This document shows positions 3,035-42,497 of a stretch of 64,000 nt of DNA, piece by piece. Position 1 is the first letter of the stretch; each line of letters starts with the position of its first letter. The notes beneath the pieces are model-generated. The model made no database searches and had not been told where the DNA came from. It saw only the letters and a list, made by a program, of their open reading frames with translations. A program made the position numbers and the translations under genes. The DNA lies in the IMG/VR virus record IMGVR_UViG_3300032315_001715, positions 372,001 through 436,000 of that record; one strand, written 5' to 3'.

Positions 3035-3694
3035 TCAACCCATGCCGGGATCGTCCCGGCCAACGCATGCAAATCCCCATGCACGTTCCCGGCAATGGAA
3101 ACACTTACCACATCGTGGGCCGGATATGTGTTGTGTGCAGGATCTTGCCAAGCGGAACATTTCCTCTTGGTTGTTTTCAAACACCAGGTCAACCGTGTGA
3201 AACTTGTAAAGATGCAGGAATGGTAGCCATACCATTCCGCCTTCGCCCTTGCTTCGTTCCGGCCGCCCAATGGGATTGCCCTGGGCATCCTTTGGCCATC
3301 GGCTGTAATCCCAGGTAGGCGTGGCGTTTGACGCATAGAATACATAGTTGATTTCCGGATATTTTCTAGAGATTTCTCTCCACGCGGCTTCTCCCTGATC
3401 CCTGTGATGTATGTCTGGATTACCAACCTCGATCGGCTGCGGTAGATCATACGGGAACTGGGTGTTGATGTAGTTGACCATCGCTGCTGAGCTTTGTACC
3501 ATTTCATTCTTCTTAAGCATGACGAATGGTTGTATGTTTGGCTTCCAGCCGAGCTCACCGTGTGCCTTGAGCAAGAGATACAGCAATATACCGCTGTCTA
3601 TTCCGCCGCTGAGCATCATCCCGTATCTGCGATTTTCCTCGATGTTGAGCCGTATCTCGGTCCCATCGATCCTTGACTTGATGATCCTAATCAT
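3035..3694 (-). CDS. QueC-like PP-loop ATPase
   Basis: LSGGIDS PP-loop and C-terminal SC...CGKCFHCRER. Confidence 0.75.
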   Translation of the reverse strand: MIRIIKSRIDGTEIRLNIEENRRYGMMLSGGIDSGILLYLLLKAHGELGWKPNIQPFVMLKKNEMVQSSAAMVNYINTQFPYDLPQPIEVGNPDIHHRDQGEAAWREISRKYPEINYVFYASNATPTWDYSRWPKDAQGNPIGRPERSKGEGGMVWLPFLHLYKFHTVDLVFENNQEEMFRLARSCTQHISGPRCGKCFHCRERAWGFACVGRDDPGMG

Positions 3695-12695: not shown

Positions 12696-12770
12696 TGGTG
12701 CACCGGGGGAATCCCGACATCCCAACCTTCCCGTTATGAGCGGGACGCTCCTCCTTTGAGCTACCAGTGC
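12696..12770 (-). tRNA. tRNA(CAT) Met/Ile2, atypical T-loop
   Basis: loop CT-CAT-AA, CCA. Confidence 0.8.
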
Positions 12771-27874: not shown

Positions 27875-28642
27875 TTATAGGAGGCTTATCAGTGTATTAA
27901 TACCCTCAACGGCCGTGTGCGACATGCTAACATCATGTCTACGATTGACCTTGCTCTCATATGGATTGATCCGTATCAACGTTGACGTCCGTTCTTCGGC
28001 GATGTAACGTATGGATGGTATCACCGTGCCGGCACCTATCTCAATACCCAGCACGCTCATCCTGGGTTCCATCCATCTGCGGAAACGATCCTCTCCGAGA
28101 TCTATGTTGGTCCAAACCATGCTTGGATCGCTAAACATCAGAACGTTGGGCCTCAAGGACTGCTGGCACCGAGCGCACCTAGGGATCTCATCGATCGATG
28201 ACAGGGTTGCAGTAAATCTTGGCATCGGTTGCAGTTGTCTCGTGCATGGCTGCTTGCATTGTGCATGCCGTAGATCGCCGTGTATCTCGTAAATGCGAGC
28301 AGGATCATATCCGGCCATGTGGAAATGCCCGTCAACATTGCTGGTCACCACGAAATAATCCTTGCCATGCTGGTTCACGGCATCGAGCAACCTGGTGTAA
28401 CCAGCATGGGGTTTGGTGTGACCATAGGCCAGCATGCGGCTTATGTAAAAATTCCAGGAGGCCAATGGATCGTCGTCAAATCCCCTAGCGGTTGCCAGGG
28501 ATATGAAATCCTCCTTGGCCTTGGTCCACATGCCATTGCTTCCACGGAAATCAGGCAATCCGCTATCAACGCTCATTCCGGCTCCGGCAAGTATGAGGAT
28601 ACCATCTGCTGAATGGAACAAGCTTGAAATGTAATCTTGCAT
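27875..28642 (-). CDS. Sir2/CobB-family NAD-dependent deacylase
   Basis: GAGMSVDSGLPDFRG, TSNVDGHF, EIHG, RPNVLMF. Confidence 0.95.
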   Translation of the reverse strand: MQDYISSLFHSADGILILAGAGMSVDSGLPDFRGSNGMWTKAKEDFISLATARGFDDDPLASWNFYISRMLAYGHTKPHAGYTRLLDAVNQHGKDYFVVTSNVDGHFHMAGYDPARIYEIHGDLRHAQCKQPCTRQLQPMPRFTATLSSIDEIPRCARCQQSLRPNVLMFSDPSMVWTNIDLGEDRFRRWMEPRMSVLGIEIGAGTVIPSIRYIAEERTSTLIRINPYESKVNRRHDVSMSHTAVEGINTLISLL

Positions 28643-28743: not shown

Positions 28744-28913
28744 TGGTGCCGGATGAGGGATTTGAACCCCCGACCTTCGGTTTTTCTTGGACTTGCGGGC
28801 TTTAGGCCTTCTGTCCTTCATGGACGTACACAGAAGTAAATTCTCTGCACGGCTCCTGAGATGTTACCCATCACGGAAACAAAACCGCTGCACTACCACT
28901 GTGCTAACCCGGC
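28744..28913 (-). tRNA. tRNA-Thr(TGT) with ~95-nt anticodon-loop insert (28784-28878)
   Basis: Both halves canonical; removing the insert gives GCGGT-TT-TGT-AA-ACCGA. Confidence 0.85.
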
Positions 28914-30534: not shown

Positions 30535-31086
30535 TTAATAAAGATCCTTGATCTTTTCAAGAATCGATTTCATCTCAACAACGTCGCTGTGCTTGGTGAT
30601 GCTCACGGCATTGTCCATGTGTCGGTGCATCTTGGCTCGACGCTCGTCCATGATCAAATCAAACAGCGCATTGTTGAGGTTAAATCGGTCATCAAGCATG
30701 CGGATGATCCGTCCGTTTGGCAATAGTATGTCCCGCACGCTTTCAACGTAGCGATAAGCTGATTCAGCGTCCATGCCATGTTGTACCATGATGCCGATGG
30801 CAGCAGCGGTGCTGCGGCTGAGACCTTGATGGCAATGCACCAACAACCGATCGCCAGCTTGCAGGTTCTTGGAAAAATCAAGAATGGCATCAAGGTGTTG
30901 TTCATTTGGCAGCACCCACTCGTCCCTCAATTGGCTTTCAACATCATGGAGATGAATGACTAGATGGTTCTCGCAGGTAAACGGCAAGTTTACACCCGGA
31001 TCCACCATGCTGATGGTGTGCGTGGGCCAGCCATTGTGGGCCCACCTGCCCGCTTCGAATATACCGCCAATCTTTAATTCAAACAT
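30535..31086 (-). CDS. dual-specificity/tyrosine phosphatase family
   Basis: VHCHQGLSRS (CX5R). Confidence 0.9.
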   Translation of the reverse strand: MFELKIGGIFEAGRWAHNGWPTHTISMVDPGVNLPFTCENHLVIHLHDVESQLRDEWVLPNEQHLDAILDFSKNLQAGDRLLVHCHQGLSRSTAAAIGIMVQHGMDAESAYRYVESVRDILLPNGRIIRMLDDRFNLNNALFDLIMDERRAKMHRHMDNAVSITKHSDVVEMKSILEKIKDLY

Positions 31087-31176
31087 GCACGCCCCCGGTG
31101 AAATGATGCAGGGTATTACCAGCGTTAAGTCTGCGAGCTGGAGGAGTTTGACCAATGCACCTCCAAAGGTTCCTCG

Positions 31177-31388: not shown

Positions 31389-31506
31389 TGGCTCCTTCTG
31401 CTGGACTCGAACCAGCAACCACCTGATTAATCTTGGACCTGATGGAGTTGCACCATCCAATCTATTGATCCCACAGTCAGGGGCTCTACCATTGAGCTAA
31501 GAAGGA
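31389..31506 (-). tRNA. tRNA-Asn(GTT) with ~43-nt anticodon-loop insert (31430-31472)
   Basis: U1-A72, G73; removing the insert gives CCTGA-CT-GTT-AA-TCAGG. Confidence 0.85.
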
Positions 31507-33405: not shown

Positions 33406-33978
33406 TTATTTTTCGATAAAATACAGAGCTGTTTGAATGAATTGCTCTTTATCTTTGACACATTCTTTCCATTCTATTCGAAGTGTTTGCCATCCTTGCT
33501 CTAAAAGCCATGCATCTCGTTTTGCATCACTCTCTCTGGTGTTTTCGTGAGTGCCGCCGTCGATTTCAATGCATTTCTTTATTTCTGGCCAAGCAAAATC
33601 AAGTGAATAAATTCCAAATGGGTATTCCGCAATGTAGTTTTTATTCTCAAATCTTTTATCAATCACAGATTCGAACCACTGCTCTGGATAACTTTTTGGA
33701 CGCCCTTTGAAATTTTTTCCCAAAGTAGGGTATGTCCCCTCCTTCAAACGTCTCAGCATGTGATGTCTGAGCTTGATTTTGGTTTCATCTGAGTGCTTCT
33801 GAGGAGGTCGATGTTTCCTGCTCATCTTTTGAGCTTCGCTTTTAGAACGAGGTGTGAACAATCCATTTTTGATTGCCTTGTTGATCGTGTTCAAGGTTGG
33901 TCCTAATTCTCGCATTGGGACCCCACTATCATATAGGCTCTGTAATTCTTTCCAATTAAACGGAGTTTTGTTTCTCAT
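33406..33978 (-). CDS. DUF559/Vsr-like endonuclease with NUMOD3
   Basis: KHSDETKIKL; YSLDFAW, IEIDGGTH, DAKRDAWLLEQGWQTLRI. Confidence 0.88.
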   Translation of the reverse strand: MRNKTPFNWKELQSLYDSGVPMRELGPTLNTINKAIKNGLFTPRSKSEAQKMSRKHRPPQKHSDETKIKLRHHMLRRLKEGTYPTLGKNFKGRPKSYPEQWFESVIDKRFENKNYIAEYPFGIYSLDFAWPEIKKCIEIDGGTHENTRESDAKRDAWLLEQGWQTLRIEWKECVKDKEQFIQTALYFIEK

Positions 33979-35153: not shown

Positions 35154-35229
35154 TGGTACCTACTGTGGGGATCGAACCCACCTCTAACAGCGTGTCGAGC
35201 TGTCGCCATCCCCAGATGACAAAGCAGGC
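35154..35229 (-). tRNA. tRNA-Val(GAC)
   Basis: loop TC-GAC-AC. Confidence 0.82.
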
Positions 35230-35482: not shown

Positions 35483-35983
35483 TCAAGGATTGTTGAGTTT
35501 CCACCAACGATTAATGGAATCAGCACCAATCTCATCACACACCTCAACAAGCTTGCCGCCGAGGCCAAGGATATCATCAAAGTGTTGGGCTAACAGCATG
35601 TTCGGGCATGCTCGCGGACGATCCGCTTTTAGCCATTCCACACCTTCCTCAAGCCTATCAACACCGTTGGCCTGCAACCACAGCGCCAGCGCCGACGCCG
35701 TTGAGCGGCATGCACCAGCAAAGCAATGCACCACCACCCGGGCATCTCCGGGCAAACGCTGGCCAAACTCTAGGATCGATTCTGCGTGCTCTCTCGTCGG
35801 TGCATACAGCTTGGCAGGATCCTCTTCGTCATCAAAGTTGATGGCAAAGTGATTCTTGGCATCGATGCGTGGCGGACGGAATACCCGATCACCAACATCC
35901 AGCATGGTGATGAGATGCGTGGCAGCAAACCGCTTGGCGGTCTTTTTGACCTCGCTCTTTCCACAAACGGTAAACTCGGGCAC
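35483..35983 (-). CDS. dual-specificity/tyrosine phosphatase family
   Basis: VHCFAGACRS (CX5R); GTG start with GGAGG. Confidence 0.9.
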   Translation of the reverse strand: MPEFTVCGKSEVKKTAKRFAATHLITMLDVGDRVFRPPRIDAKNHFAINFDDEEDPAKLYAPTREHAESILEFGQRLPGDARVVVHCFAGACRSTASALALWLQANGVDRLEEGVEWLKADRPRACPNMLLAQHFDDILGLGGKLVEVCDEIGADSINRWWKLNNP

Positions 35984-36005
35984 GTTACACCTCCTTGTTA
36001 GAAAA

Positions 36006-36080
36006 TGGTCTCGCGTGCGGGTGCCGGCCCCGCTACTCCGGGATGAAAGCCCGGTGTTTTAGCTGGTAAACTAACGCGAG
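36006..36080 (-). tRNA. tRNA-Glu(TTC), atypical T-loop
   Basis: loop CT-TTC-AT. Confidence 0.8.
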
Positions 36081-36224
36081 TTACGATTCCGCATGCGCTG
36101 GCCCCCCAATCCCGCCGCGCTGCACGACACCACCTGCCTTGCTTCTTTCGTCGCGTAACATGGCATCTTACCGGTCCATGACATGCTAACCTGTCCGCAG
36201 ACAGGGAACCATGCACGGATGATT

Positions 36225-36309
36225 TGGCTCAACCGGCAGGCTTCGAACCTGCACGCCTTGCGGCGCCTGATTAACAGTCAGGTGGGTCTACCAGTTCCCC
36301 CACAGTTGA
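36225..36309 (-). tRNA. tRNA-Asn(GTT) with long variable arm
   Basis: loop CT-GTT-AA; GCC-GCAA-GGC extra arm. Confidence 0.85.
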
Positions 36310-36368
36310 ATAAAACCCAGTAGTTGTTGTTCTTGTTGCATGCTTTATAGCACGCACCGTATTTGGTG

Positions 36369-37043
36369 TCAACGCCTATTTTTTATCGTTCTTCCTTTGA
36401 TCCATCCGACTGGTATAGGATCAGATTTTTTAATTTTTACAGATTTTTGACCATCTGTTATCCACATTGTGTCAAACTGACTATTGGATTTGCCAAATCC
36501 TCGCCCTTTTGATGATTCGGACATTTTAGATCTAGTTTCAGCCGAATGTGTCTTTCCTTTGAAAGATGCAAATATGTCAGGCGTATATTTTGATTTAATG
36601 GTTTCTTGCCATTTTTTTGAACGATTTGCAACTCTTTCTGTATCTAATAGAAAAAGTCTTAGACCCTCCTTGGCTTTTTCTTCTATCCCTCTAGATTTTG
36701 CTACTTTCATAGCCTTTTGATTTTTTTCTTTTCTTAACGATTCATTTGAATTGATATAACCAAATCCGCCATGTCCTCCTGGACATAAATTATATGTATC
36801 TGGTCTTGCACACATTTCTTCTGTCACAAGTTCTTTTTCTTTGTCGTTCATTTCTTTTTCACAAGAAAAGACGTGTAAGATTTCTTTGGAAAAATTTTCA
36901 ATACCATATTTGTCAATTGCAAGTTTTATGAGCTTGCCAGATCCAAAATATTCATCATTAAGGTCAGCAGTTTTATGCTTTCCTATATAAATCTTGCTGT
37001 TAAGGAGATTAGTAATTTTGTATATTATGAAGAACATAAACAC
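36369..37043 (-). CDS. GIY-YIG homing endonuclease (Seg-like) with NUMOD3
   Basis: IIYKITN...IYIGKH...YFGSG, YNLCPGG, GKTHSAETRSKMS. Confidence 0.95.
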   Translation of the reverse strand: MFMFFIIYKITNLLNSKIYIGKHKTADLNDEYFGSGKLIKLAIDKYGIENFSKEILHVFSCEKEMNDKEKELVTEEMCARPDTYNLCPGGHGGFGYINSNESLRKEKNQKAMKVAKSRGIEEKAKEGLRLFLLDTERVANRSKKWQETIKSKYTPDIFASFKGKTHSAETRSKMSESSKGRGFGKSNSQFDTMWITDGQKSVKIKKSDPIPVGWIKGRTIKNRR

Positions 37044-37069
37044 CCCCGTTTGGAGTATTTATGAAAAAA

Positions 37070-37142
37070 TGAGCGGGTAGCGAGAATCGAACTCGCGCGT
37101 CCACCATGGCAAGGTGGCAGGCTACCTCTACATCATACCCGC
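37070..37142 (-). tRNA. tRNA-Gly(GCC), CCA incomplete
   Basis: loop TT-GCC-AT; 3' end abuts the GIY-YIG leader. Confidence 0.88.
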
Positions 37143-37380
37143 ATTATATGGTTAGTTATCCATGCAAGGCGCGTCTAATCCAGTTCTGTCCAAGAGGACG
37201 ACCTTCATGTGGGGTCGCGTCGTTCAATGCACCTTGCCTTGGTGCACCTTGCAAGATTGAAATCCCGTGTTCTACGATACTCGGCTGTAGGTGACTAGCC
37301 CACTATATCCTGGACGGTTGAGTCCAGGCCACCGAATGCTACCATGTCACGGGGTCTTTGGTGGGGGTAAGTCCCAGATT

Positions 37381-37968
37381 CTATATCAACCCTAAACTTT
37401 TGAGCTTGGTTTTATCCCATACCTCGCAGACGACATCTGGATATAACTGGCGCCAAAGCTCGAACTTTTCTTTGTTTGCTTTTCGCCAATAACCCTTGAC
37501 CTCTATGATTTTTCCGCAGGATAAAACAAAGTCAGGTCTGTATGACCTATTTTTTGATAACAGGAAAACCTTCTTGCTGTAATCCCATTTGATACCTTGG
37601 CTATCGAGGTAAGACGCAACTTTCACCTCCCAGGATGAATCCATCCTGATGCCATTATAATAACTTTGTCTATCTCCTCTATGTTTGGCGTTATTGTTAC
37701 CTCTCATAGATTCGGATATTTTAGCTTTGGTGTCATCGGTATGTTTCACCAACGAATTGAGCTTTCTGCCTTTTATCTTTAAGGCATGCCCTAGAATCCT
37801 TGAATCTGTTTCCTTGCTAAGTCCTTTGTTCCAGCTAACATGCGCTGTCTTGAGACGTGCTCGATAACCGGGACATTTGTAATAAACTGGTTGGCAGCAC
37901 CACCCGCTCCATTTAGAGCGAGGTGGATACGAAGCGGTGTCTCCGCAATACTTGCATGTGTTGTTCAT
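37381..37968 (-). CDS. PD-(D/E)xK endonuclease with NUMOD3
   Basis: KHTDDTKAKIS; DSSWE, YRPDFVL...IEVKGY. Confidence 0.88.
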   Translation of the reverse strand: MNNTCKYCGDTASYPPRSKWSGWCCQPVYYKCPGYRARLKTAHVSWNKGLSKETDSRILGHALKIKGRKLNSLVKHTDDTKAKISESMRGNNNAKHRGDRQSYYNGIRMDSSWEVKVASYLDSQGIKWDYSKKVFLLSKNRSYRPDFVLSCGKIIEVKGYWRKANKEKFELWRQLYPDVVCEVWDKTKLKSLGLI

Positions 37969-37984
37969 GAAAGTATTTATGCAA

Positions 37985-38021
37985 ACAGTCTGCTCCAACC
38001 CTCCAACGTTGGCGCTTCCCC
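37985..38021 (-). pseudogene. 5' half of tRNA-Tyr broken in the anticodon (3' remnant at 37359-37380)
   Basis: GGGGAAGCGCCAACGTTGGAGGGTTGGAGCAGACTGT; after the ORF stop AATCTG...CCCCACCA. Confidence 0.75.
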
Positions 38022-38026
38022 AAATT

Positions 38027-38105
38027 TGGTAGACCAGGTGGGACTCGAACCCACGGTTTTTACTGATTAAGAATCAGCTGCCTTGGCCGCTCGGCGCACT
38101 GGTCT
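38027..38105 (-). tRNA. tRNA-Lys(CTT)
   Basis: loop TT-CTT-AA. Confidence 0.9.
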
Positions 38106-38226
38106 GTGGTATAATGGCCTTAGAACACTCCGCCGGTGCTGCCCTAACCCTTGTTTGCGCTCAAGTCCCCGGTCTACGGCTGCATCTCAACCAGGGAGGG
38201 CTATCTGCTCTCGTCGTGCTCTAACT

Positions 38227-38301
38227 TGGTCTCGCGTGCGGGTGCCGGCCCCGCTACTCCGGGATGAAAGCCCAGTATTTTAGCTGGTAAACTAACGCGA
38301 G
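38227..38301 (-). tRNA. tRNA-Glu(TTC), near-duplicate of 36006-36080
   Basis: Two substitutions. Confidence 0.8.
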
Positions 38302-38317
38302 AAATCTCATTCTAACT

Positions 38318-38397
38318 TGGAGGACCACCAGGGAATCGAACCCTGCTTGTTGCTGCTTCCGCGGTGGGTTTTAGCGCAACAAGAGCCATCGTGGCCC
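38318..38397 (-). ncRNA. D-armless tRNA-like RNA
   Basis: Acceptor, T arm and CCA; CTTGTTGC/GCAACAAG stem with 22-nt loop. Confidence 0.7.
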
Positions 38398-38451
38398 GTA
38401 AATTTGGTATAAATAGATTAAATAGTTTTTTAAGCAACAGGAGAATGTCGC

Positions 38452-39081
38452 ATGTCTTATGAAATTTTCATTAAAAGTCAGTCATACACTCGACAATCAC
38501 CTAATCTTTCTAAGCTTGGGTTTGATTTTGTAAACCATGATAGCAAAGCTGAATATCAAAAAATTCAGAACCTTCTTAGCACTGAATATTTAATTCTTGG
38601 CGAAAGTATGATAACCTTGCAAGAAAAATACAGCATCCCAAGTTCACGGACCTTACATGATTTGTTCAAACTATTTGATATTGAAGCACGATCATTTAGT
38701 AATGCTAATAGGTTAGCATTGACAACGGAGCGATCCACAATGCCGTGTTGTTACAAATACAAGACAGGATGGCATACAACTTGGGATCAAAAACAAGTCT
38801 TCTTGCGAAGTTCGTATGAATTTGATTATGCGAAAATTCTCGATGAGTCAAAAATACCGTATGAGGTGGAAGCACTTCGAATCAAATACTATTCCTCAAC
38901 CGAGGAGAAATATCGTATAGCTATACCCGATTTTTTACTACCTTGCAGTCATACCATAGTTGAGATCAAATCTCAATTTACCTACGATAGTCAACAAATG
39001 AAAGACAAGTTCTGTGCATATCAAGCACTCGGATATAAAGCGATTTTGATTCTAGAGGGCAAAGAAACCTCTCTAGAATGA
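38452..39081 (+). CDS. PD-(D/E)xK endonuclease (TnsA-N-like)
   Basis: LRSSYE, YEVE, IPDF...IVEIKS. Confidence 0.85.
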   Translation: MSYEIFIKSQSYTRQSPNLSKLGFDFVNHDSKAEYQKIQNLLSTEYLILGESMITLQEKYSIPSSRTLHDLFKLFDIEARSFSNANRLALTTERSTMPCCYKYKTGWHTTWDQKQVFLRSSYEFDYAKILDESKIPYEVEALRIKYYSSTEEKYRIAIPDFLLPCSHTIVEIKSQFTYDSQQMKDKFCAYQALGYKAILILEGKETSLE

Positions 39082-39084
39082 AGT

Positions 39085-39218
39085 TGGAGGACCCCGGTGG
39101 TAACGATCCACTTGCGGGCGGGTTAATCTTGGCATAGAGGACTTGCACCTCATGTGACCTGGTTGTCATCTGCCTAAAGTCCGCTGCCGGCACCTGCCTG
39201 GCTATACGCTCGGGGTCC
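39085..39218 (-). tRNA. tRNA-Lys(TTT)-like with ~50-nt anticodon-loop insert (39126-39175)
   Basis: GGACCCCG/CGGGGTCC acceptor; removing the insert gives GCGGA-CT-TTT-AA-CCCGC. Confidence 0.72.
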
Positions 39219-39267
39219 TTGTTATCTATTGTTTAATGGGATTTCCTTGGTAATGCAAGGAAAAACT

Positions 39268-39340
39268 TGGAGGACCGTGTGGGAATCAAACCTTCCCGGC
39301 CGGATTAAGAGCCCAGCTGAGCCTCAGGCTGCAATGGTCC
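39268..39340 (-). tRNA. tRNA-Lys(CTT), minimal D arm
   Basis: loop CT-CTT-AA. Confidence 0.65.
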
Positions 39341-39437
39341 ATCTAACTCTCGGAAGAGCCGCACGCTCTCCATTCCCGTGTCGCCCAGGGACCCTTATCG
39401 GACCCTTCTGGTGCGGTTAGGCAACGCGGGGTATTCT

Positions 39438-39514
39438 TGGTAGCCCCACCGGGATTTGAACCCGGATTTCCCGCTTGAGAGGCGAGTGTTCTAGACCGCT
39501 TAAACTATGGGGCC
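39438..39514 (-). tRNA. tRNA-Glu(CTC)
   Basis: loop CT-CTC-AA. Confidence 0.9.
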
Positions 39515-39562
39515 GTATGGTTGGTTCACAAACTACCGTGCTTGTGAATGTGTTTGATCTGT

Positions 39563-40150
39563 TTAACGAGGAGCAAACGGATCTATTATCACCGGGCAAT
39601 CGCCTCGTTGCATGATGTTTTCATCATGTAGATCAAAATCAATTGCTGAATTGGTACTAACAACATTAGCCAGTAGCTCGATTGCATGTAAGAAATCCGG
39701 CCATTTTTTAATGAAATGCTCGATGTGAGATTTGAGTTTCTCGTCAGTCATGTTGCTGAGATAGTCTCGCCATTTAGGCTCGTCGATGTATCTCAAAAAC
39801 CAATCAGTTGCTATATGATCAGGGTCGGTTCGAACATATTCCCAGGGTGACAGCATTTCTAATCTCAATGCACGGATACCTGGGACCAAAGTAACCGGTA
39901 ATCCTCTAAACTTTGGAAAATGTGGATTATCCTGATGTTTTCGGGCTAGTTCGACAAATTTAGCGTAACCTATATCTGCCTCGTCGTACAGCTTTAGAAC
40001 ATAATTCAAGTTCGGATGTTGCCAAACACTGCCAAATGTGCCGTCTCCCAGCATTTCGAATCCATGCTTGAGAAGCTTTTTCTTCGCGCTGTCTGTGTTT
40101 GTGATGTCTTGTCGCAGGCTATCTGCGCCCACAAGTTCATTGAGTTTCAT
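39563..40150 (-). CDS. protein-kinase-like protein
   Basis: LGDGTFGSVW, VLK, DLHDENIM, IIDP. Confidence 0.85.
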   Translation of the reverse strand: MKLNELVGADSLRQDITNTDSAKKKLLKHGFEMLGDGTFGSVWQHPNLNYVLKLYDEADIGYAKFVELARKHQDNPHFPKFRGLPVTLVPGIRALRLEMLSPWEYVRTDPDHIATDWFLRYIDEPKWRDYLSNMTDEKLKSHIEHFIKKWPDFLHAIELLANVVSTNSAIDFDLHDENIMQRGDCPVIIDPFAPR

Positions 40151-40162
40151 GATGCTATTTAT

Positions 40163-40237
40163 TGGTCAGCGTGGGGAATTTTGCGATCCCGGCCTCCAGG
40201 CTCCCGACCTGGCACTCTTCTCCTGAGCTACACGCTG
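40163..40237 (-). tRNA. tRNA-Pro(GGG)
   Basis: C1-G72, loop TC-GGG-AG. Confidence 0.8.
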
Positions 40238-40244
40238 TTGTAAA

Positions 40245-40319
40245 TGGTCAGGGAGGGGAATTTCGAAATCCCGGCTTCCAGGTTCCAGGCCTGGCACTCT
40301 GCCTCTGAGCTACTCCCTG
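40245..40319 (-). tRNA. tRNA-Pro(TGG)
   Basis: C1-G72, loop CC-TGG-AA. Confidence 0.82.
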
Positions 40320-40326
40320 ATGTTGT

Positions 40327-40403
40327 TAGATGCGGAGGATGGATTCGCACCATCGACCTCTTGGTTATGAGCCAAGCGAGCTACTAGACTGCTCCACTCC
40401 GCA
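40327..40403 (-). tRNA. tRNA-Met(CAT), initiator-like body, no encoded CCA
   Basis: GTGGAGCAG...GTAGCTCG D arm, loop CT-CAT-AA. Confidence 0.8.
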
Positions 40404-40410
40404 ATAAACT

Positions 40411-40487
40411 TGGCGATCCTAGAGGGATTCGAACCCCCATTCTCCGGTTTCGTAGACCAGCGCTCTATCCAGTTGAGCCATAGGATC
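40411..40487 (-). tRNA. tRNA-Arg(ACG)
   Basis: loop CT-ACG-AA. Confidence 0.93.
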
Positions 40488-40494
40488 AAATAAT

Positions 40495-40571
40495 TGGTGG
40501 ACGCGTCTGGATTCGAACCAGATGGGGTAGCGAACCCCGTCGCCATAGCTTGATACCTACCAAGGAAGCCC
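40495..40571 (-). ncRNA. Ala/tmRNA-like element
   Basis: T arm plus TCCACCA, 5' GGG, no canonical D or anticodon arm. Confidence 0.5.
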
Positions 40572-40886: not shown

Positions 40887-40962
40887 TGGTGCCGGCGGTT
40901 GGTTCCGCCCCAACTCCTCCTGCTCTTCAGGCAGGCGCTTCTACTAAGTTAGCTTCACCGGC
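40887..40962 (-). tRNA. tRNA-Phe(GAA)
   Basis: loop CT-GAA-GA, atypical T-loop. Confidence 0.85.
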
Positions 40963-42112: not shown

Positions 42113-42188
42113 TGGTGGAGCATGTCGGTTCTGCCCCGACTACCTCCGCATTGCAAATGCGGCGCTCTCCTGATTGAGCTAATGCCCC
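42113..42188 (-). tRNA. tRNA-Ala(TGC)
   Basis: G3-U70, loop TT-TGC-AA. Confidence 0.88.
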
Positions 42189-42412: not shown

Positions 42413-42497
42413 TGGTGGGAGTGGTAGGATTCGAACCTACTCACCCAAAGGAACGGATTTACAGTCCGCCGCCGCTCTCCAACTCAGCCGCACTCCC
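42413..42497 (-). tRNA. tRNA-Tyr(GTA), first tRNA of the array
   Basis: loop CT-GTA-AA, A73. Confidence 0.93.

What the first reader, a model, noticed from the sequence alone, without database searches (positions are those of the whole stretch)
37359..38021. PD-(D/E)xK endonuclease splitting tRNA-Tyr, with both halves still visible
The 5' half ends GCAGA-CT-GT, then ATAAATA and the ORF. Right after the stop comes AATCTG...CCCCACCA (anticodon 3' strand and acceptor end, T arm lost). The breakpoint (35/36) matches one register of the short Asn/Lys inserts, so those inserts and the endonuclease cassettes may be related. An intact tRNA-Tyr exists at 42413.
Basis: partly seen in the sequence, partly recalled or inferred. 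Interest (0 to 1): 0.65.

Follow-up and report, generated by a model that had tools for sequence, protein, structure and literature searches.

The report
Mobile nuclease gene inside tRNA-Tyr gene
A selfish-looking DNA-cutting enzyme gene sits where the anticodon loop of a phage tRNA-Tyr gene should be, leaving a dead gene copy; its relatives lie in or beside tRNA-Tyr genes of many other phages.

Summary
On the minus strand, 38021..37985 is a true tRNA-Tyr 5' half. It runs from the acceptor strand through the D arm and anticodon stem to CTGT. It is followed by CATAAATA, then an intact 195-aa ORF (37968..37381), then a 22-nt remnant (37380..37359): AATCTGG, six letters, CCCCCACCA. There is no T arm.

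The ORF has an N-terminal Cys cluster, a NUMOD3 motif and a T7-endonuclease-I-like PD-(D/E)xK core with E..PD..ExK intact.

The window belongs to a 453-kb phage. Of 40 relatives of the ORF examined, 32 lie in phage tRNA arrays, always on the tRNA strand. A well-supported clade of 25 holds all 19 tRNA-Tyr-linked copies. The closest relatives show a Tyr 5' half ending CTGT, then an ATAAATA motif, the ORF, and a full Tyr-like tRNA. Four others sit inside a tRNA gene whose two halves are still intact.

Best reading: a free-standing homing-type endonuclease cassette captured at a tRNA-Tyr anticodon loop. This copy is a pseudogene, and the intact tRNA-Tyr at 42413..42497 covers the function.

There is no ribozyme and no complete 3' exon, so it is not a spliceable intron. 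The short tRNA inserts show no sequence similarity to the cassette.

Novelty: a new variant of a known kind (the T4 SegB theme).

The parts
37985..38021 (-). 5' half of a tRNA-Tyr gene: acceptor strand, D arm, anticodon-stem 5' strand, and loop up to ..CTGT
   Evidence: Read directly. The best matches among 295 tRNAs are two tRNA-Tyr genes, scoring 27 and 24 against a shuffle maximum of 15.
37974..37981 (-). CATAAATA, one mismatch from TATAAATA (the T4 late-promoter consensus, from my own knowledge). Presumed own promoter of the cassette.
   Evidence: ATAAATA or TATAAAT lies within 70 nt upstream of the ORF in 18 of 33 family loci, against 5% of random windows. TATAAATA occurs 6 times in the window against 1.3 expected. 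Promoter function is inferred, not shown.
37381..37968 (-). Intact 195-aa endonuclease gene: Cys cluster (residues 5-33), NUMOD3 (residues 75-93), T7-endonuclease-I-like PD-(D/E)xK core (residues 109-182)
   Evidence: Pfam; PDB sequence matches; family alignment with invariant E114, P145, D146, E156, K158; AF2 model with pLDDT 87.8; Foldseek; PHROGs 'endonuclease / Holliday junction resolvase'.
37423..37644 (-). Nuclease core (residues 109-182) carrying the E..PD..ExK catalytic motif
   Evidence: Aligned residue by residue to T7 endonuclease I chains 1m0d, 1fzr and 2pfj. The motif columns are invariant in 35 relatives.
37359..37380 (-). tRNA-Tyr 3' remnant: anticodon-loop/stem 3' strand (AATCTGG), six letters, then acceptor 3' end with CCA (CCCCCACCA). 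The variable arm and T arm are missing.
   Evidence: Read directly and compared with the intact Tyr of L032. Pairing with the 5' half is 4/5 and 5/7.
42413..42497 (-). Intact class II tRNA-Tyr(GTA), the likely working copy
   Evidence: ARAGORN; Rfam tRNA at 47.2 bits.
38027..38105 (-). tRNA-Lys(CTT), the upstream neighbour. Its CCA lies 5 nt before the Tyr 5' half.
   Evidence: ARAGORN; Rfam at 53.9 bits.

Best explanation
This is a free-standing, intron-less, homing-type endonuclease gene cassette lodged at the anticodon-loop position of one tRNA-Tyr gene, in the tRNA array of a 453-kb phage. The cassette is a late-promoter-like CATAAATA followed by a 195-aa ORF.

Shown:
- The ORF is intact and keeps the catalytic E..PD..ExK of T7-endonuclease-I-like nucleases, plus a NUMOD3 DNA-binding motif.
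- The flanks are tRNA-Tyr pieces.
- Relatives of the ORF are tied to tRNA arrays, and one clade is tied to tRNA-Tyr.

Inferred:
- The enzyme cuts tRNA-Tyr genes in or near the anticodon loop in phage genomes that lack the cassette, during co-infection.
- Break repair then copies the cassette in. Alternatively, the cassette was captured directly in its own cut site.
- The occupied site can no longer be cut.

This tRNA-Tyr copy is dead. It has no T arm, nucleotide A36 is missing, and the stems are imperfect. The phage relies on the intact copy at 42413..42497 and on host tRNA.
For: (1) The protein is an intact nuclease. Pfam Phage_endo_I E 2e-9 and NUMOD3 E 1e-4. T7 endo I chains at E 7e-9 with catalytic residues aligned. 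The motif is invariant in 35 relatives. The AF2 model is confident and Foldseek puts T7 endo I first, with the homing endonuclease I-Bth0305I core also matched.

(2) The flanks are tRNA-Tyr.

(3) The position recurs. The break ...AGACT(G/A)T followed by T-rich ..ATAAATA is seen in the window, L003, L037, L048, L050, L052, L055, L131 and L133.

(4) In L019, L051, L053 and L054 the ORF lies inside a tRNA whose halves show 7/7 acceptor pairing and a 5/5 T stem.

(5) 32 of 40 family loci have tRNAs within 1 kb, all on the ORF's strand. 11 have a CT[GA]TAAA loop just after the stop, against 5% background.

(6) In the ML tree all 19 Tyr-linked rows fall in one clade (98/97). The Tyr label needs 4 changes against 12.2 in shuffles (0 of 500 shuffles as low). 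The window lies in a 5-row all-Tyr clade (100/99).

(7) The cassette looks patchy among relatives. A freshwater-metagenome contig matches 37138..37363 and then runs on for 255 unlike letters exactly where the remnant and cassette begin. No contig from runs X2 or X3 covers the ORF.

(8) The genome holds several other NUMOD3 ORFs, and the array holds GIY-YIG, DUF559 and a second endo-I-like ORF.

(9) There is no room for a ribozyme (16 nt and 0 nt of non-coding insert) and no Rfam hit.
Against: No cleavage, homing or expression data exist. No RNA run holds this DNA.

No near-identical genome with an empty site was found.

The intact tRNA-Tyr in the same genome keeps the loop GACTGTAAATC, so how it escapes cutting is unexplained. 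It differs only in stem positions.

The 3' remnant is short.

This is the only clear Phage_endo_I match in the genome, and no endonuclease VII or clear RuvC was found. A housekeeping resolvase role is therefore not excluded.

Well-kept halves in four split loci could mean those tRNAs still matter.

Isotype labels for the tree were partly set by eye.
Confidence: 0.7

Rival explanations
1. Same mobile cassette, different history. The 3' remnant is not the other half of the split gene. It is what is left of a second, complete tRNA-Tyr that once followed the ORF, as in the closest relatives, after two internal deletions. The 5' half is then an orphan footprint of an earlier cut-and-repair event.
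For: L131 (74% identity), L133 (73%) and L037 (65%) all show a Tyr 5' half ending CTGT, then ATAAATA, the ORF, and a full Tyr-like tRNA starting 0-2 nt after the stop.

The window remnant's stems (TCTGG, TACCCCC) pair with the 5' half at only 4/5 and 5/7 positions. They would fit a gene with CCAGA and GGGGGTA strands.

L048 and L055 share an almost identical orphan half although their ORFs are only 43% identical.
Against: It needs more events than a single insertion plus one deletion. In the window the stop codon is followed at once by the loop/stem 3' strand, as in a simple split. Simple splits exist elsewhere in the family: L003, L019, L051, L053, L054.
Confidence: 0.3
2. The ORF is the phage's own Holliday-junction resolvase (a T7 gene 3 analogue) that happens to lie in the tRNA array, not a selfish element.
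For: It is the only Phage_endo_I match in the genome. No endonuclease VII was found, and only a weak RuvC-like hit. PHROGs families carry the name 'Holliday junction resolvase'.
Against: The ORF has the NUMOD3 and Cys-cluster DNA-binding add-ons that I know from homing endonucleases. It lies inside a broken tRNA gene. Family members sit at the same tRNA position in unrelated phages, and tRNA isotype follows clade. Contigs of relatives carry the flanks but not the ORF. The profile match covers only positions 15-88 of 149.
Confidence: 0.1
3. It is a true tRNA intron. The insert is removed from the RNA, by proteins since no ribozyme is present, and a working tRNA-Tyr is rejoined, for example by the phage RNA ligase.
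For: The phage encodes an RNA ligase (PF09414) just upstream of the array. Other members of the family lie in tRNAs with perfect halves. Lak megaphages were reported to have enigmatic tRNA introns, one itself holding a tRNA (PMC6784885).
Against: At this locus the variable arm and T arm are absent. No junction can give CTGTAAA because the letter before AATCTG is G. The stems mismatch. No group I or other ribozyme family matches. No EndA or RtcB is found in the genome.
Confidence: 0.03
4. The tRNA-like flanks are chance resemblances next to an ordinary intergenic nuclease gene.
For: Rfam's tRNA model gives no hit on either piece alone.
Against: The 5' piece matches two independent tRNA-Tyr genes far above the shuffle range. 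It has the usual 5-nt spacing after the preceding CCA. The same arrangement recurs in many relatives.
Confidence: 0.01

Closest known systems
Phage T4/T6 SegB, a free-standing GIY-YIG homing endonuclease in the tRNA gene cluster (PMC2330249; PMC13096335)
   Same: It is a free-standing endonuclease gene inside a phage tRNA array. It cuts within tRNA genes and drives preferential inheritance of the tRNA region. It lies next to tRNA-Tyr, and its homologues are enriched near tRNAs.
   Different: SegB has a different fold (GIY-YIG). It recognises the T-psi-C stem-loop motif and sits between genes. Here the nuclease is PD-(D/E)xK, and the gene physically replaces the anticodon loop of a tRNA-Tyr gene. 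Its activity here is untested.
I-Ssp6803I, a PD-(D/E)xK homing endonuclease of the group I intron in cyanobacterial tRNA-fMet (Zhao et al. 2007, cited in PMC3424549)
   Same: A restriction-fold homing endonuclease whose gene sits in the anticodon loop of a tRNA gene.
   Different: I-Ssp6803I lies within a self-splicing group I intron, so the tRNA survives. Here no ribozyme is present. It is also a different Pfam family: PF11645 is not matched.
T7 endonuclease I (gene 3), a junction-resolving enzyme
   Same: It is the closest match by both sequence and fold for residues 109-182, with the catalytic E, D, E and K conserved.
   Different: T7 endo I has no NUMOD3 or Cys-cluster N-terminal part, is a housekeeping resolvase, and is not tied to tRNA genes. 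The match covers only about half of the Pfam profile (positions 15-88 of 149).
'Fractured genes': free-standing endonuclease genes between the halves of split-intein genes (PMC2677866)
   Same: A host gene is broken in two by an inserted free-standing endonuclease gene.
   Different: There the product is restored by protein trans-splicing. Here no repair route is evident and the copy looks dead.
Enigmatic tRNA introns of Lak megaphages (PMC6784885)
   Same: Huge phages with tRNA genes that carry non-ribozyme inserts in the anticodon loop, including tRNA-Tyr(GTA) and an insert that itself holds a tRNA.
   Different: As far as I read, those inserts were not reported to encode an endonuclease. 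I made no sequence comparison with them.

Membership tests
T7-endonuclease-I-like PD-(D/E)xK nucleases (Pfam PF05367) | Profile match above the curated cut-off | tested here: met
   37.7 bits against a 29.1 cut-off, residues 109-179. The genome scan gives the same place.
T7-endonuclease-I-like PD-(D/E)xK nucleases (Pfam PF05367) | Catalytic Glu, Asp, Glu and Lys (E..PD..ExK) present | tested here: met
   Aligned to 1m0d, 1fzr and 2pfj. E114, P145, D146, E156 and K158 are invariant in 35 relatives.
T7-endonuclease-I-like PD-(D/E)xK nucleases (Pfam PF05367) | Full-length endo I architecture and four-way-junction resolving activity | tested here: inconclusive
   Only profile positions 15-88 of 149 are matched. 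Foldseek TM-scores are low because T7 endo I is domain-swapped. Activity cannot be tested with these tools.
Free-standing homing endonuclease genes | Nuclease domain joined to a sequence-reading DNA-binding module | tested here: met
   NUMOD3 at 22.5 bits against a 20.4 cut-off, plus an N-terminal Cys cluster with invariant C5 and C8.
Free-standing homing endonuclease genes | Recurrent insertion at or beside one conserved target site in otherwise unrelated genomes | tested here: met
   The tRNA-Tyr anticodon-loop junction recurs in at least 9 loci. Isotype association follows clades.
Free-standing homing endonuclease genes | Presence/absence polymorphism among close relatives | tested here: inconclusive
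   A metagenome contig keeps the flank and diverges at the cassette boundary, and no contig from X2 or X3 covers the ORF. No full empty-site allele was recovered.
Free-standing homing endonuclease genes | Site-specific cleavage of the cassette-free allele, and gene conversion | not testable with these tools
   Needs purified protein and a recombination assay.
Group I intron in a tRNA anticodon loop, with intron-encoded endonuclease | Ribozyme core between the exons | tested here: not met
   No Rfam family up to E 10 in 37100..38500 other than tRNAs. Only 16 nt before the ORF and 0 nt after it are non-coding.
Protein-spliced (archaeal/eukaryal type) tRNA intron | Two complete exons that rebuild a cloverleaf | tested here: not met
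   The variable arm and T arm are absent. The loop cannot be rebuilt. Stems pair at 4/5 and 5/7. ARAGORN with introns allowed finds nothing here.
Protein-spliced (archaeal/eukaryal type) tRNA intron | Splicing endonuclease and ligase available | tested here: inconclusive
   No tRNA_int_endo and no RtcB in the phage genome. One PF09414 RNA ligase is present. The host is unknown.
I-Ssp6803I family (PF11645) | Profile match | tested here: not met
   Not among the Pfam matches up to E 0.1. Not among the top 50 Foldseek PDB matches.

The most novel reading that the evidence does not exclude
The T7-endo-I-like/NUMOD3 family would be an undescribed class of tRNA-gene-specific mobile cassettes that enter the anticodon loop without any intron. 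The phage would tolerate this in one of two ways:
- The cassette travels with, or regenerates, a replacement tRNA. These replacements are often a re-modelled tRNA-Tyr with atypical D and T arms that may also resist the enzyme.
- In the copies whose halves stay perfect, the halves are rejoined at the RNA level by phage RNA-repair enzymes.
Probability: 0.15. Interest if true: 0.8.

Novelty: new variant of a known kind. Interest (0 to 1): 0.55.

Why it matters
Homing endonucleases in phage tRNA clusters are known from T4 SegB, where the gene lies between tRNA genes and the enzyme reads the T-loop motif. Here a different nuclease fold is found inside tRNA genes at the anticodon loop, with no intron to rescue the tRNA. 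Clades of the family follow tRNA isotype (Tyr, Cys, Phe).

If the enzymes cut where their genes sit, they would be a natural set of nucleases that read anticodon stem-loop DNA. They would also help explain why phage tRNA arrays are so variable and littered with tRNA fragments and duplicates.

The finding also warns annotators of two things. Orphan tRNA halves next to nuclease ORFs are footprints, not introns. And atypical Tyr-like tRNAs next to these genes are missed by ARAGORN, the one tRNA finder used here.

Tried and rejected
- Rfam on the 5' half alone, as a stretch cut at the break, gave no truncated tRNA hit. I relied on homology to intact tRNA-Tyr genes instead.
- A search for a matching 3' half elsewhere in the genome (CTTCCCCNCCA, one mismatch allowed) found nothing tRNA-like.
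- Megablast of 36000..40500 against GenBank phages matched only single tRNAs.
- Pattern scans for the conserved spacer found only the same IMG/VR contig and one distant relative, L036. No empty-site allele was obtained.
- No RNA run holds this DNA, so expression and splicing could not be tested. The laid runs were DNA contigs only.
- Cofolding the two tRNA pieces was no better than shuffles.
- Alignment of the short inserts to the cassette was no better than shuffles.
- A covariance model of the neighbouring conserved RNA found only its two training copies in 232 kb of loci.
- Literature searches found no description of this arrangement.
- I did not build or search a joined two-exon model. Exons were handled by reference or by coordinates only.

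Full report
**Setting.** The window is bases 372001-436000 of a 452,799-bp IMG/VR virus record, judged complete by CheckV. About 45 tRNA genes, all on the minus strand, lie between window positions 6.8 kb and 42.5 kb. Many small ORFs lie between them. They include:
- a GIY-YIG/NUMOD3 ORF (36369..37043);
- a DUF559 nuclease (33406..33978);
- a second endonuclease-I-like ORF on the plus strand (38452..39081);
- phosphatase-like ORFs and a Sir2-like ORF.

This is a huge phage with a large, nuclease-ridden tRNA array.

**The observation.** The minus strand reads as follows.
- tRNA-Lys(CTT) ends with CCA at 38027.
- Five nt later, 38021..37985 gives GGGGAAG CG CCAA CGTTGGAGGG TTGG A GCAGA CTGT. This is an acceptor strand, a well-paired D arm, an anticodon-stem 5' strand, and the loop as far as the first two anticodon letters of Tyr (GT).
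- Then come TTG, CATAAATA (37981..37974) and CTTTC, and then the ATG at 37968.
- The ORF ends with TAG at 37381.
- It is followed at once by AATCTGG GACTTA CCCCCACCA (37380..37359).

**Is the 5' piece real?** It was compared with 295 ARAGORN tRNAs from the genome and all fetched loci.
- The best hits are two tRNA-Tyr genes: L032 at score 27 and L019 231-317 at score 24.
- The shuffle maximum is 15.
- The L019 gene was not selected by my pattern search, and it shares a near-identical D arm.

The 5' half is therefore real.

**Is the 3' piece real?** It is short, but it is in the right order and orientation.
- AATCTG is the expected loop/stem 3' strand.
- CCCCACCA is the expected end, as in the L032 gene.
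- The conserved element that follows this CCA also follows a tRNA's CCA in a distant relative.

The variable arm and T arm are missing. No other 3' half exists in the genome. Pairing between the two pieces is only 4/5 and 5/7.

**The protein.**
- Pfam gives Phage_endo_I (above cut-off, residues 109-179) and NUMOD3 (residues 75-93).
- phmmer against PDB sequences finds only T7 endonuclease I, with the catalytic Glu, Asp, Glu and Lys aligned.
- In an alignment of 35 relatives (43-76% identity), E114, P145, D146, E156, V157 and K158 are invariant. So are C5 and C8 of an N-terminal Cys cluster.
- An AlphaFold model is confident (pLDDT 87.8).
- Foldseek ranks T7 endo I first, then Bax1 and the I-Bth0305I homing endonuclease core.

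The gene is intact and looks active. The word search found at least 150 relatives, all unnamed or 'hypothetical'.

**Family context.** I fetched relatives from IMG/VR and from public assemblies.
- Of 40 non-redundant loci, 32 have tRNAs within 1 kb, and all of those tRNAs are on the ORF's strand.
- 18 have an ARAGORN tRNA starting within -40 to +60 nt of the stop.
- 11 have a Tyr loop (CT[GA]TAAA) just downstream, against 5% of random windows.
- ATAAATA or TATAAAT lies within 70 nt upstream of the start in 18 of 33 loci, against 5% background.
- TATAAATA is enriched in the window, including in front of the plus-strand nuclease ORF.

I read this motif as a T4-late-type promoter. That is an inference from my own knowledge of the T4 consensus.

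**Two architectures recur.**

(i) Simple split: a tRNA 5' half, the ORF, then a 3' half.
- This form is seen in the window and in L003 (same break, ...CAGACTGT|TTTGTATAAAG, T arm kept).
- It is also seen in L019, where ARAGORN calls tRNA-Ile(TAT) with a 670-nt insert.
- It is seen in L051, L053 and L054 as well.
- In L019, L051, L053 and L054 the two halves show 7/7 acceptor pairing, a 5/5 T stem and a canonical T loop.

(ii) Orphan 5' half ending ...AGACT(G/A)T, then ATAAATA, the ORF, then a complete tRNA that abuts or overlaps the stop codon.
- Loci L131, L133, L037, L048, L050, L052 and L055 are Tyr-linked.
- L004, L007 and L008 are Phe-linked, and L009 is Thr-linked.
- A 3' scrap of the broken gene sometimes follows the complete tRNA, in L007, L008, L009 and L131.
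- L038 has the ORF free-standing, 5 nt upstream of a tRNA-Tyr whose loop reads CTATAAA.

**Tree.** A maximum-likelihood tree of 36 proteins splits with 98/97 support.
- One side is a 25-row clade that holds all 19 Tyr-linked rows.
- The other side is an 11-row clade linked to other isotypes.
- The Tyr label needs 4 changes, against 12.2 in shuffles (0 of 500 as low).
- A Cys-linked subclade has 98/96 support.
- The window's protein sits in a five-row, all-Tyr clade (100/99).

Some labels were set by eye, and related rows share labels, so this shows clustering and not mechanism.

**Mechanism.** The simplest account is a homing-type endonuclease whose target is the anticodon stem-loop DNA of tRNA-Tyr genes.
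- The shared junction after ACT(G/A)T would mark the cut.
- Orphan 5' halves would be footprints of one-sided repair.
- Simple splits would be capture of the cassette in its own cut site.
- Occupation of the site gives immunity.

These steps are inferred. Nothing here shows cleavage.

Patchiness among relatives is suggested by read laying. A 747-nt contig from a freshwater run matches 37138..37363. It then continues for 255 unlike letters where the remnant and ORF begin. No contig from runs X2 or X3 covers the ORF at 80% likeness.

**Which gene does the 3' remnant come from?** The closest relatives have architecture (ii), and the remnant's stems fit the 5' half imperfectly. The remnant may therefore come from a second tRNA-Tyr copy. 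I keep this as a variant history at about 0.3.

**Not an intron.**
- Only 16 non-coding nt precede the ORF and none follow it.
- No ribozyme family matches.
- The T arm is absent.
- No splice junction can restore CTGTAAA.
- The genome lacks EndA and RtcB, though it has one RNA ligase.
- No RNA run was available.

**Resolvase rival.** I cannot exclude that the protein doubles as the phage's junction resolvase, because no other resolvase was detected. Its add-on domains, its position and its family behaviour argue otherwise.

**Short inserts.** Two tRNA genes carry inserts of 43 nt (31392..31506) and 93 nt (28747..28913) in the anticodon loop.
- Depending on register, both can be read as tRNA-Asn(GTT).
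- They share a small hairpin and the ending GTCCAAG(A).
- They show no similarity to the cassette or its ends beyond shuffles, and they lack ATAAATA.

**Known relatives of the idea.**
- T4/T6 SegB is a free-standing GIY-YIG enzyme in the tRNA cluster. It cuts within tRNA genes at the T-loop motif and lies next to tRNA-Tyr (PMC2330249, PMC13096335).
- I-Ssp6803I is a PD-(D/E)xK enzyme in a tRNA anticodon loop, but inside a group I intron (PMC3424549).
- 'Fractured genes' are host genes split by free-standing endonuclease genes (PMC2677866).
- Lak megaphages have unexplained tRNA introns (PMC6784885).

I found no paper describing this family or arrangement. That is a limited search, not proof of novelty.

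**Verdict.**
- Observation: confirmed.
- Interpretation: partly supported.
- Novelty: a new variant of a known kind.
- Interest: moderate.

Noticed in passing
window 31392-31506 (-) and 28747-28913 (-): Two tRNA genes (Rfam 56.5 and 49.6 bits) carry anticodon-loop inserts of 43 and 93 nt. Both can be read as tRNA-Asn(GTT) in one register. The inserts share a GATGG..CATC hairpin and end in GTCCAAG(A). No ribozyme family matches them. The 93-nt precursor folds better than shuffles (z = -3.2).
   Followed up: partly
window 37255-37356 (-); L036 6386-6492: A conserved element of about 100 nt lies right after a tRNA's CCA in both phages. It has long identical core stretches, and one hairpin shows two compensatory pairs. 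It is not in Rfam. A covariance model found no further copy in 232 kb of loci. It may be a small stable RNA of the tRNA cluster, like the T4 species 1 and 2 RNAs (that comparison is from my own knowledge).
   Followed up: partly
L131 761-844, L132 1672-1754, L045 1803-1892, L047 1687-1778; also L050, L057, L058 and L037 just after the ORF stop: These are Tyr-like tRNAs with a CTGTAAA loop, CCA ends and co-varying acceptor and anticodon stems, but with odd D and T arms. In one type a strand after the acceptor pairs with the variable region. ARAGORN misses all of them. They always follow a relative of the nuclease gene.
   Followed up: partly
L131 852-874; L007 about 3544-3565; window 37359-37376: After the cassette there is a tiny hairpin made of acceptor-stem letters followed by NCCA. 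In L131 it is GGGAGAG-GTTAC-CTCTCCC-ACCA. The form recurs in three loci, so it may be more than random decay.
   Followed up: no
window 38452-39081 (+), with TATAAATA at 38408-38415: A second endonuclease-I-like ORF (Pfam weak; PHROGs 'Holliday junction resolvase/endonuclease') lies on the strand opposite to the tRNAs, with a perfect late-promoter-like motif in front.
   Followed up: partly
window 38230-38301 (-); also 42116-42188, 40890-40962, 36009-36080, 35157-35229, 12699-12770 (-): Rfam finds tRNA genes here that ARAGORN does not list. The one at 38230-38301 (39.1 bits, loop CUUUCAU, probably Glu-UUC) appeared only in the small-region search.
   Followed up: no
genome G000 321051-321206 (outside the window): Two adjacent tRNAs with anticodon CTA (amber suppressors by anticodon). 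The phage may read TAG as a residue in some genes. I did not test this, and I used table 11 throughout.
   Followed up: no
genome G000 370773-371294 (just before the window): An RNA ligase (PF09414, 65 bits, 424-aa frame) lies next to the tRNA array. No RtcB and no EndA are present in the genome.
   Followed up: partly
window 30535-31155, 35483-35983, 27875-28642, 33406-33978 (all -): The array also holds two dual-specificity-phosphatase-like ORFs, a Sir2-family ORF and a DUF559 (Vsr-like) nuclease ORF between tRNA genes.
   Followed up: no
L048 about 918-952 and L055 about 901-935: Nearly identical orphan tRNA 5' halves (GG.TGT.TAGGAAAATTGGTAACCCCAGAAGACTAT) precede nuclease ORFs that are only 43% identical. 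Either the half is kept by selection, or different cassettes entered the same site.
   Followed up: no
L017 1660-2397: ARAGORN calls a tRNA-Leu(GAG) with a 642-nt insert. The insert holds TATAAATA and another ORF with a Cys cluster and an ExK-like motif. This is a further nuclease-in-tRNA case in the same contig as a family member.
   Followed up: no
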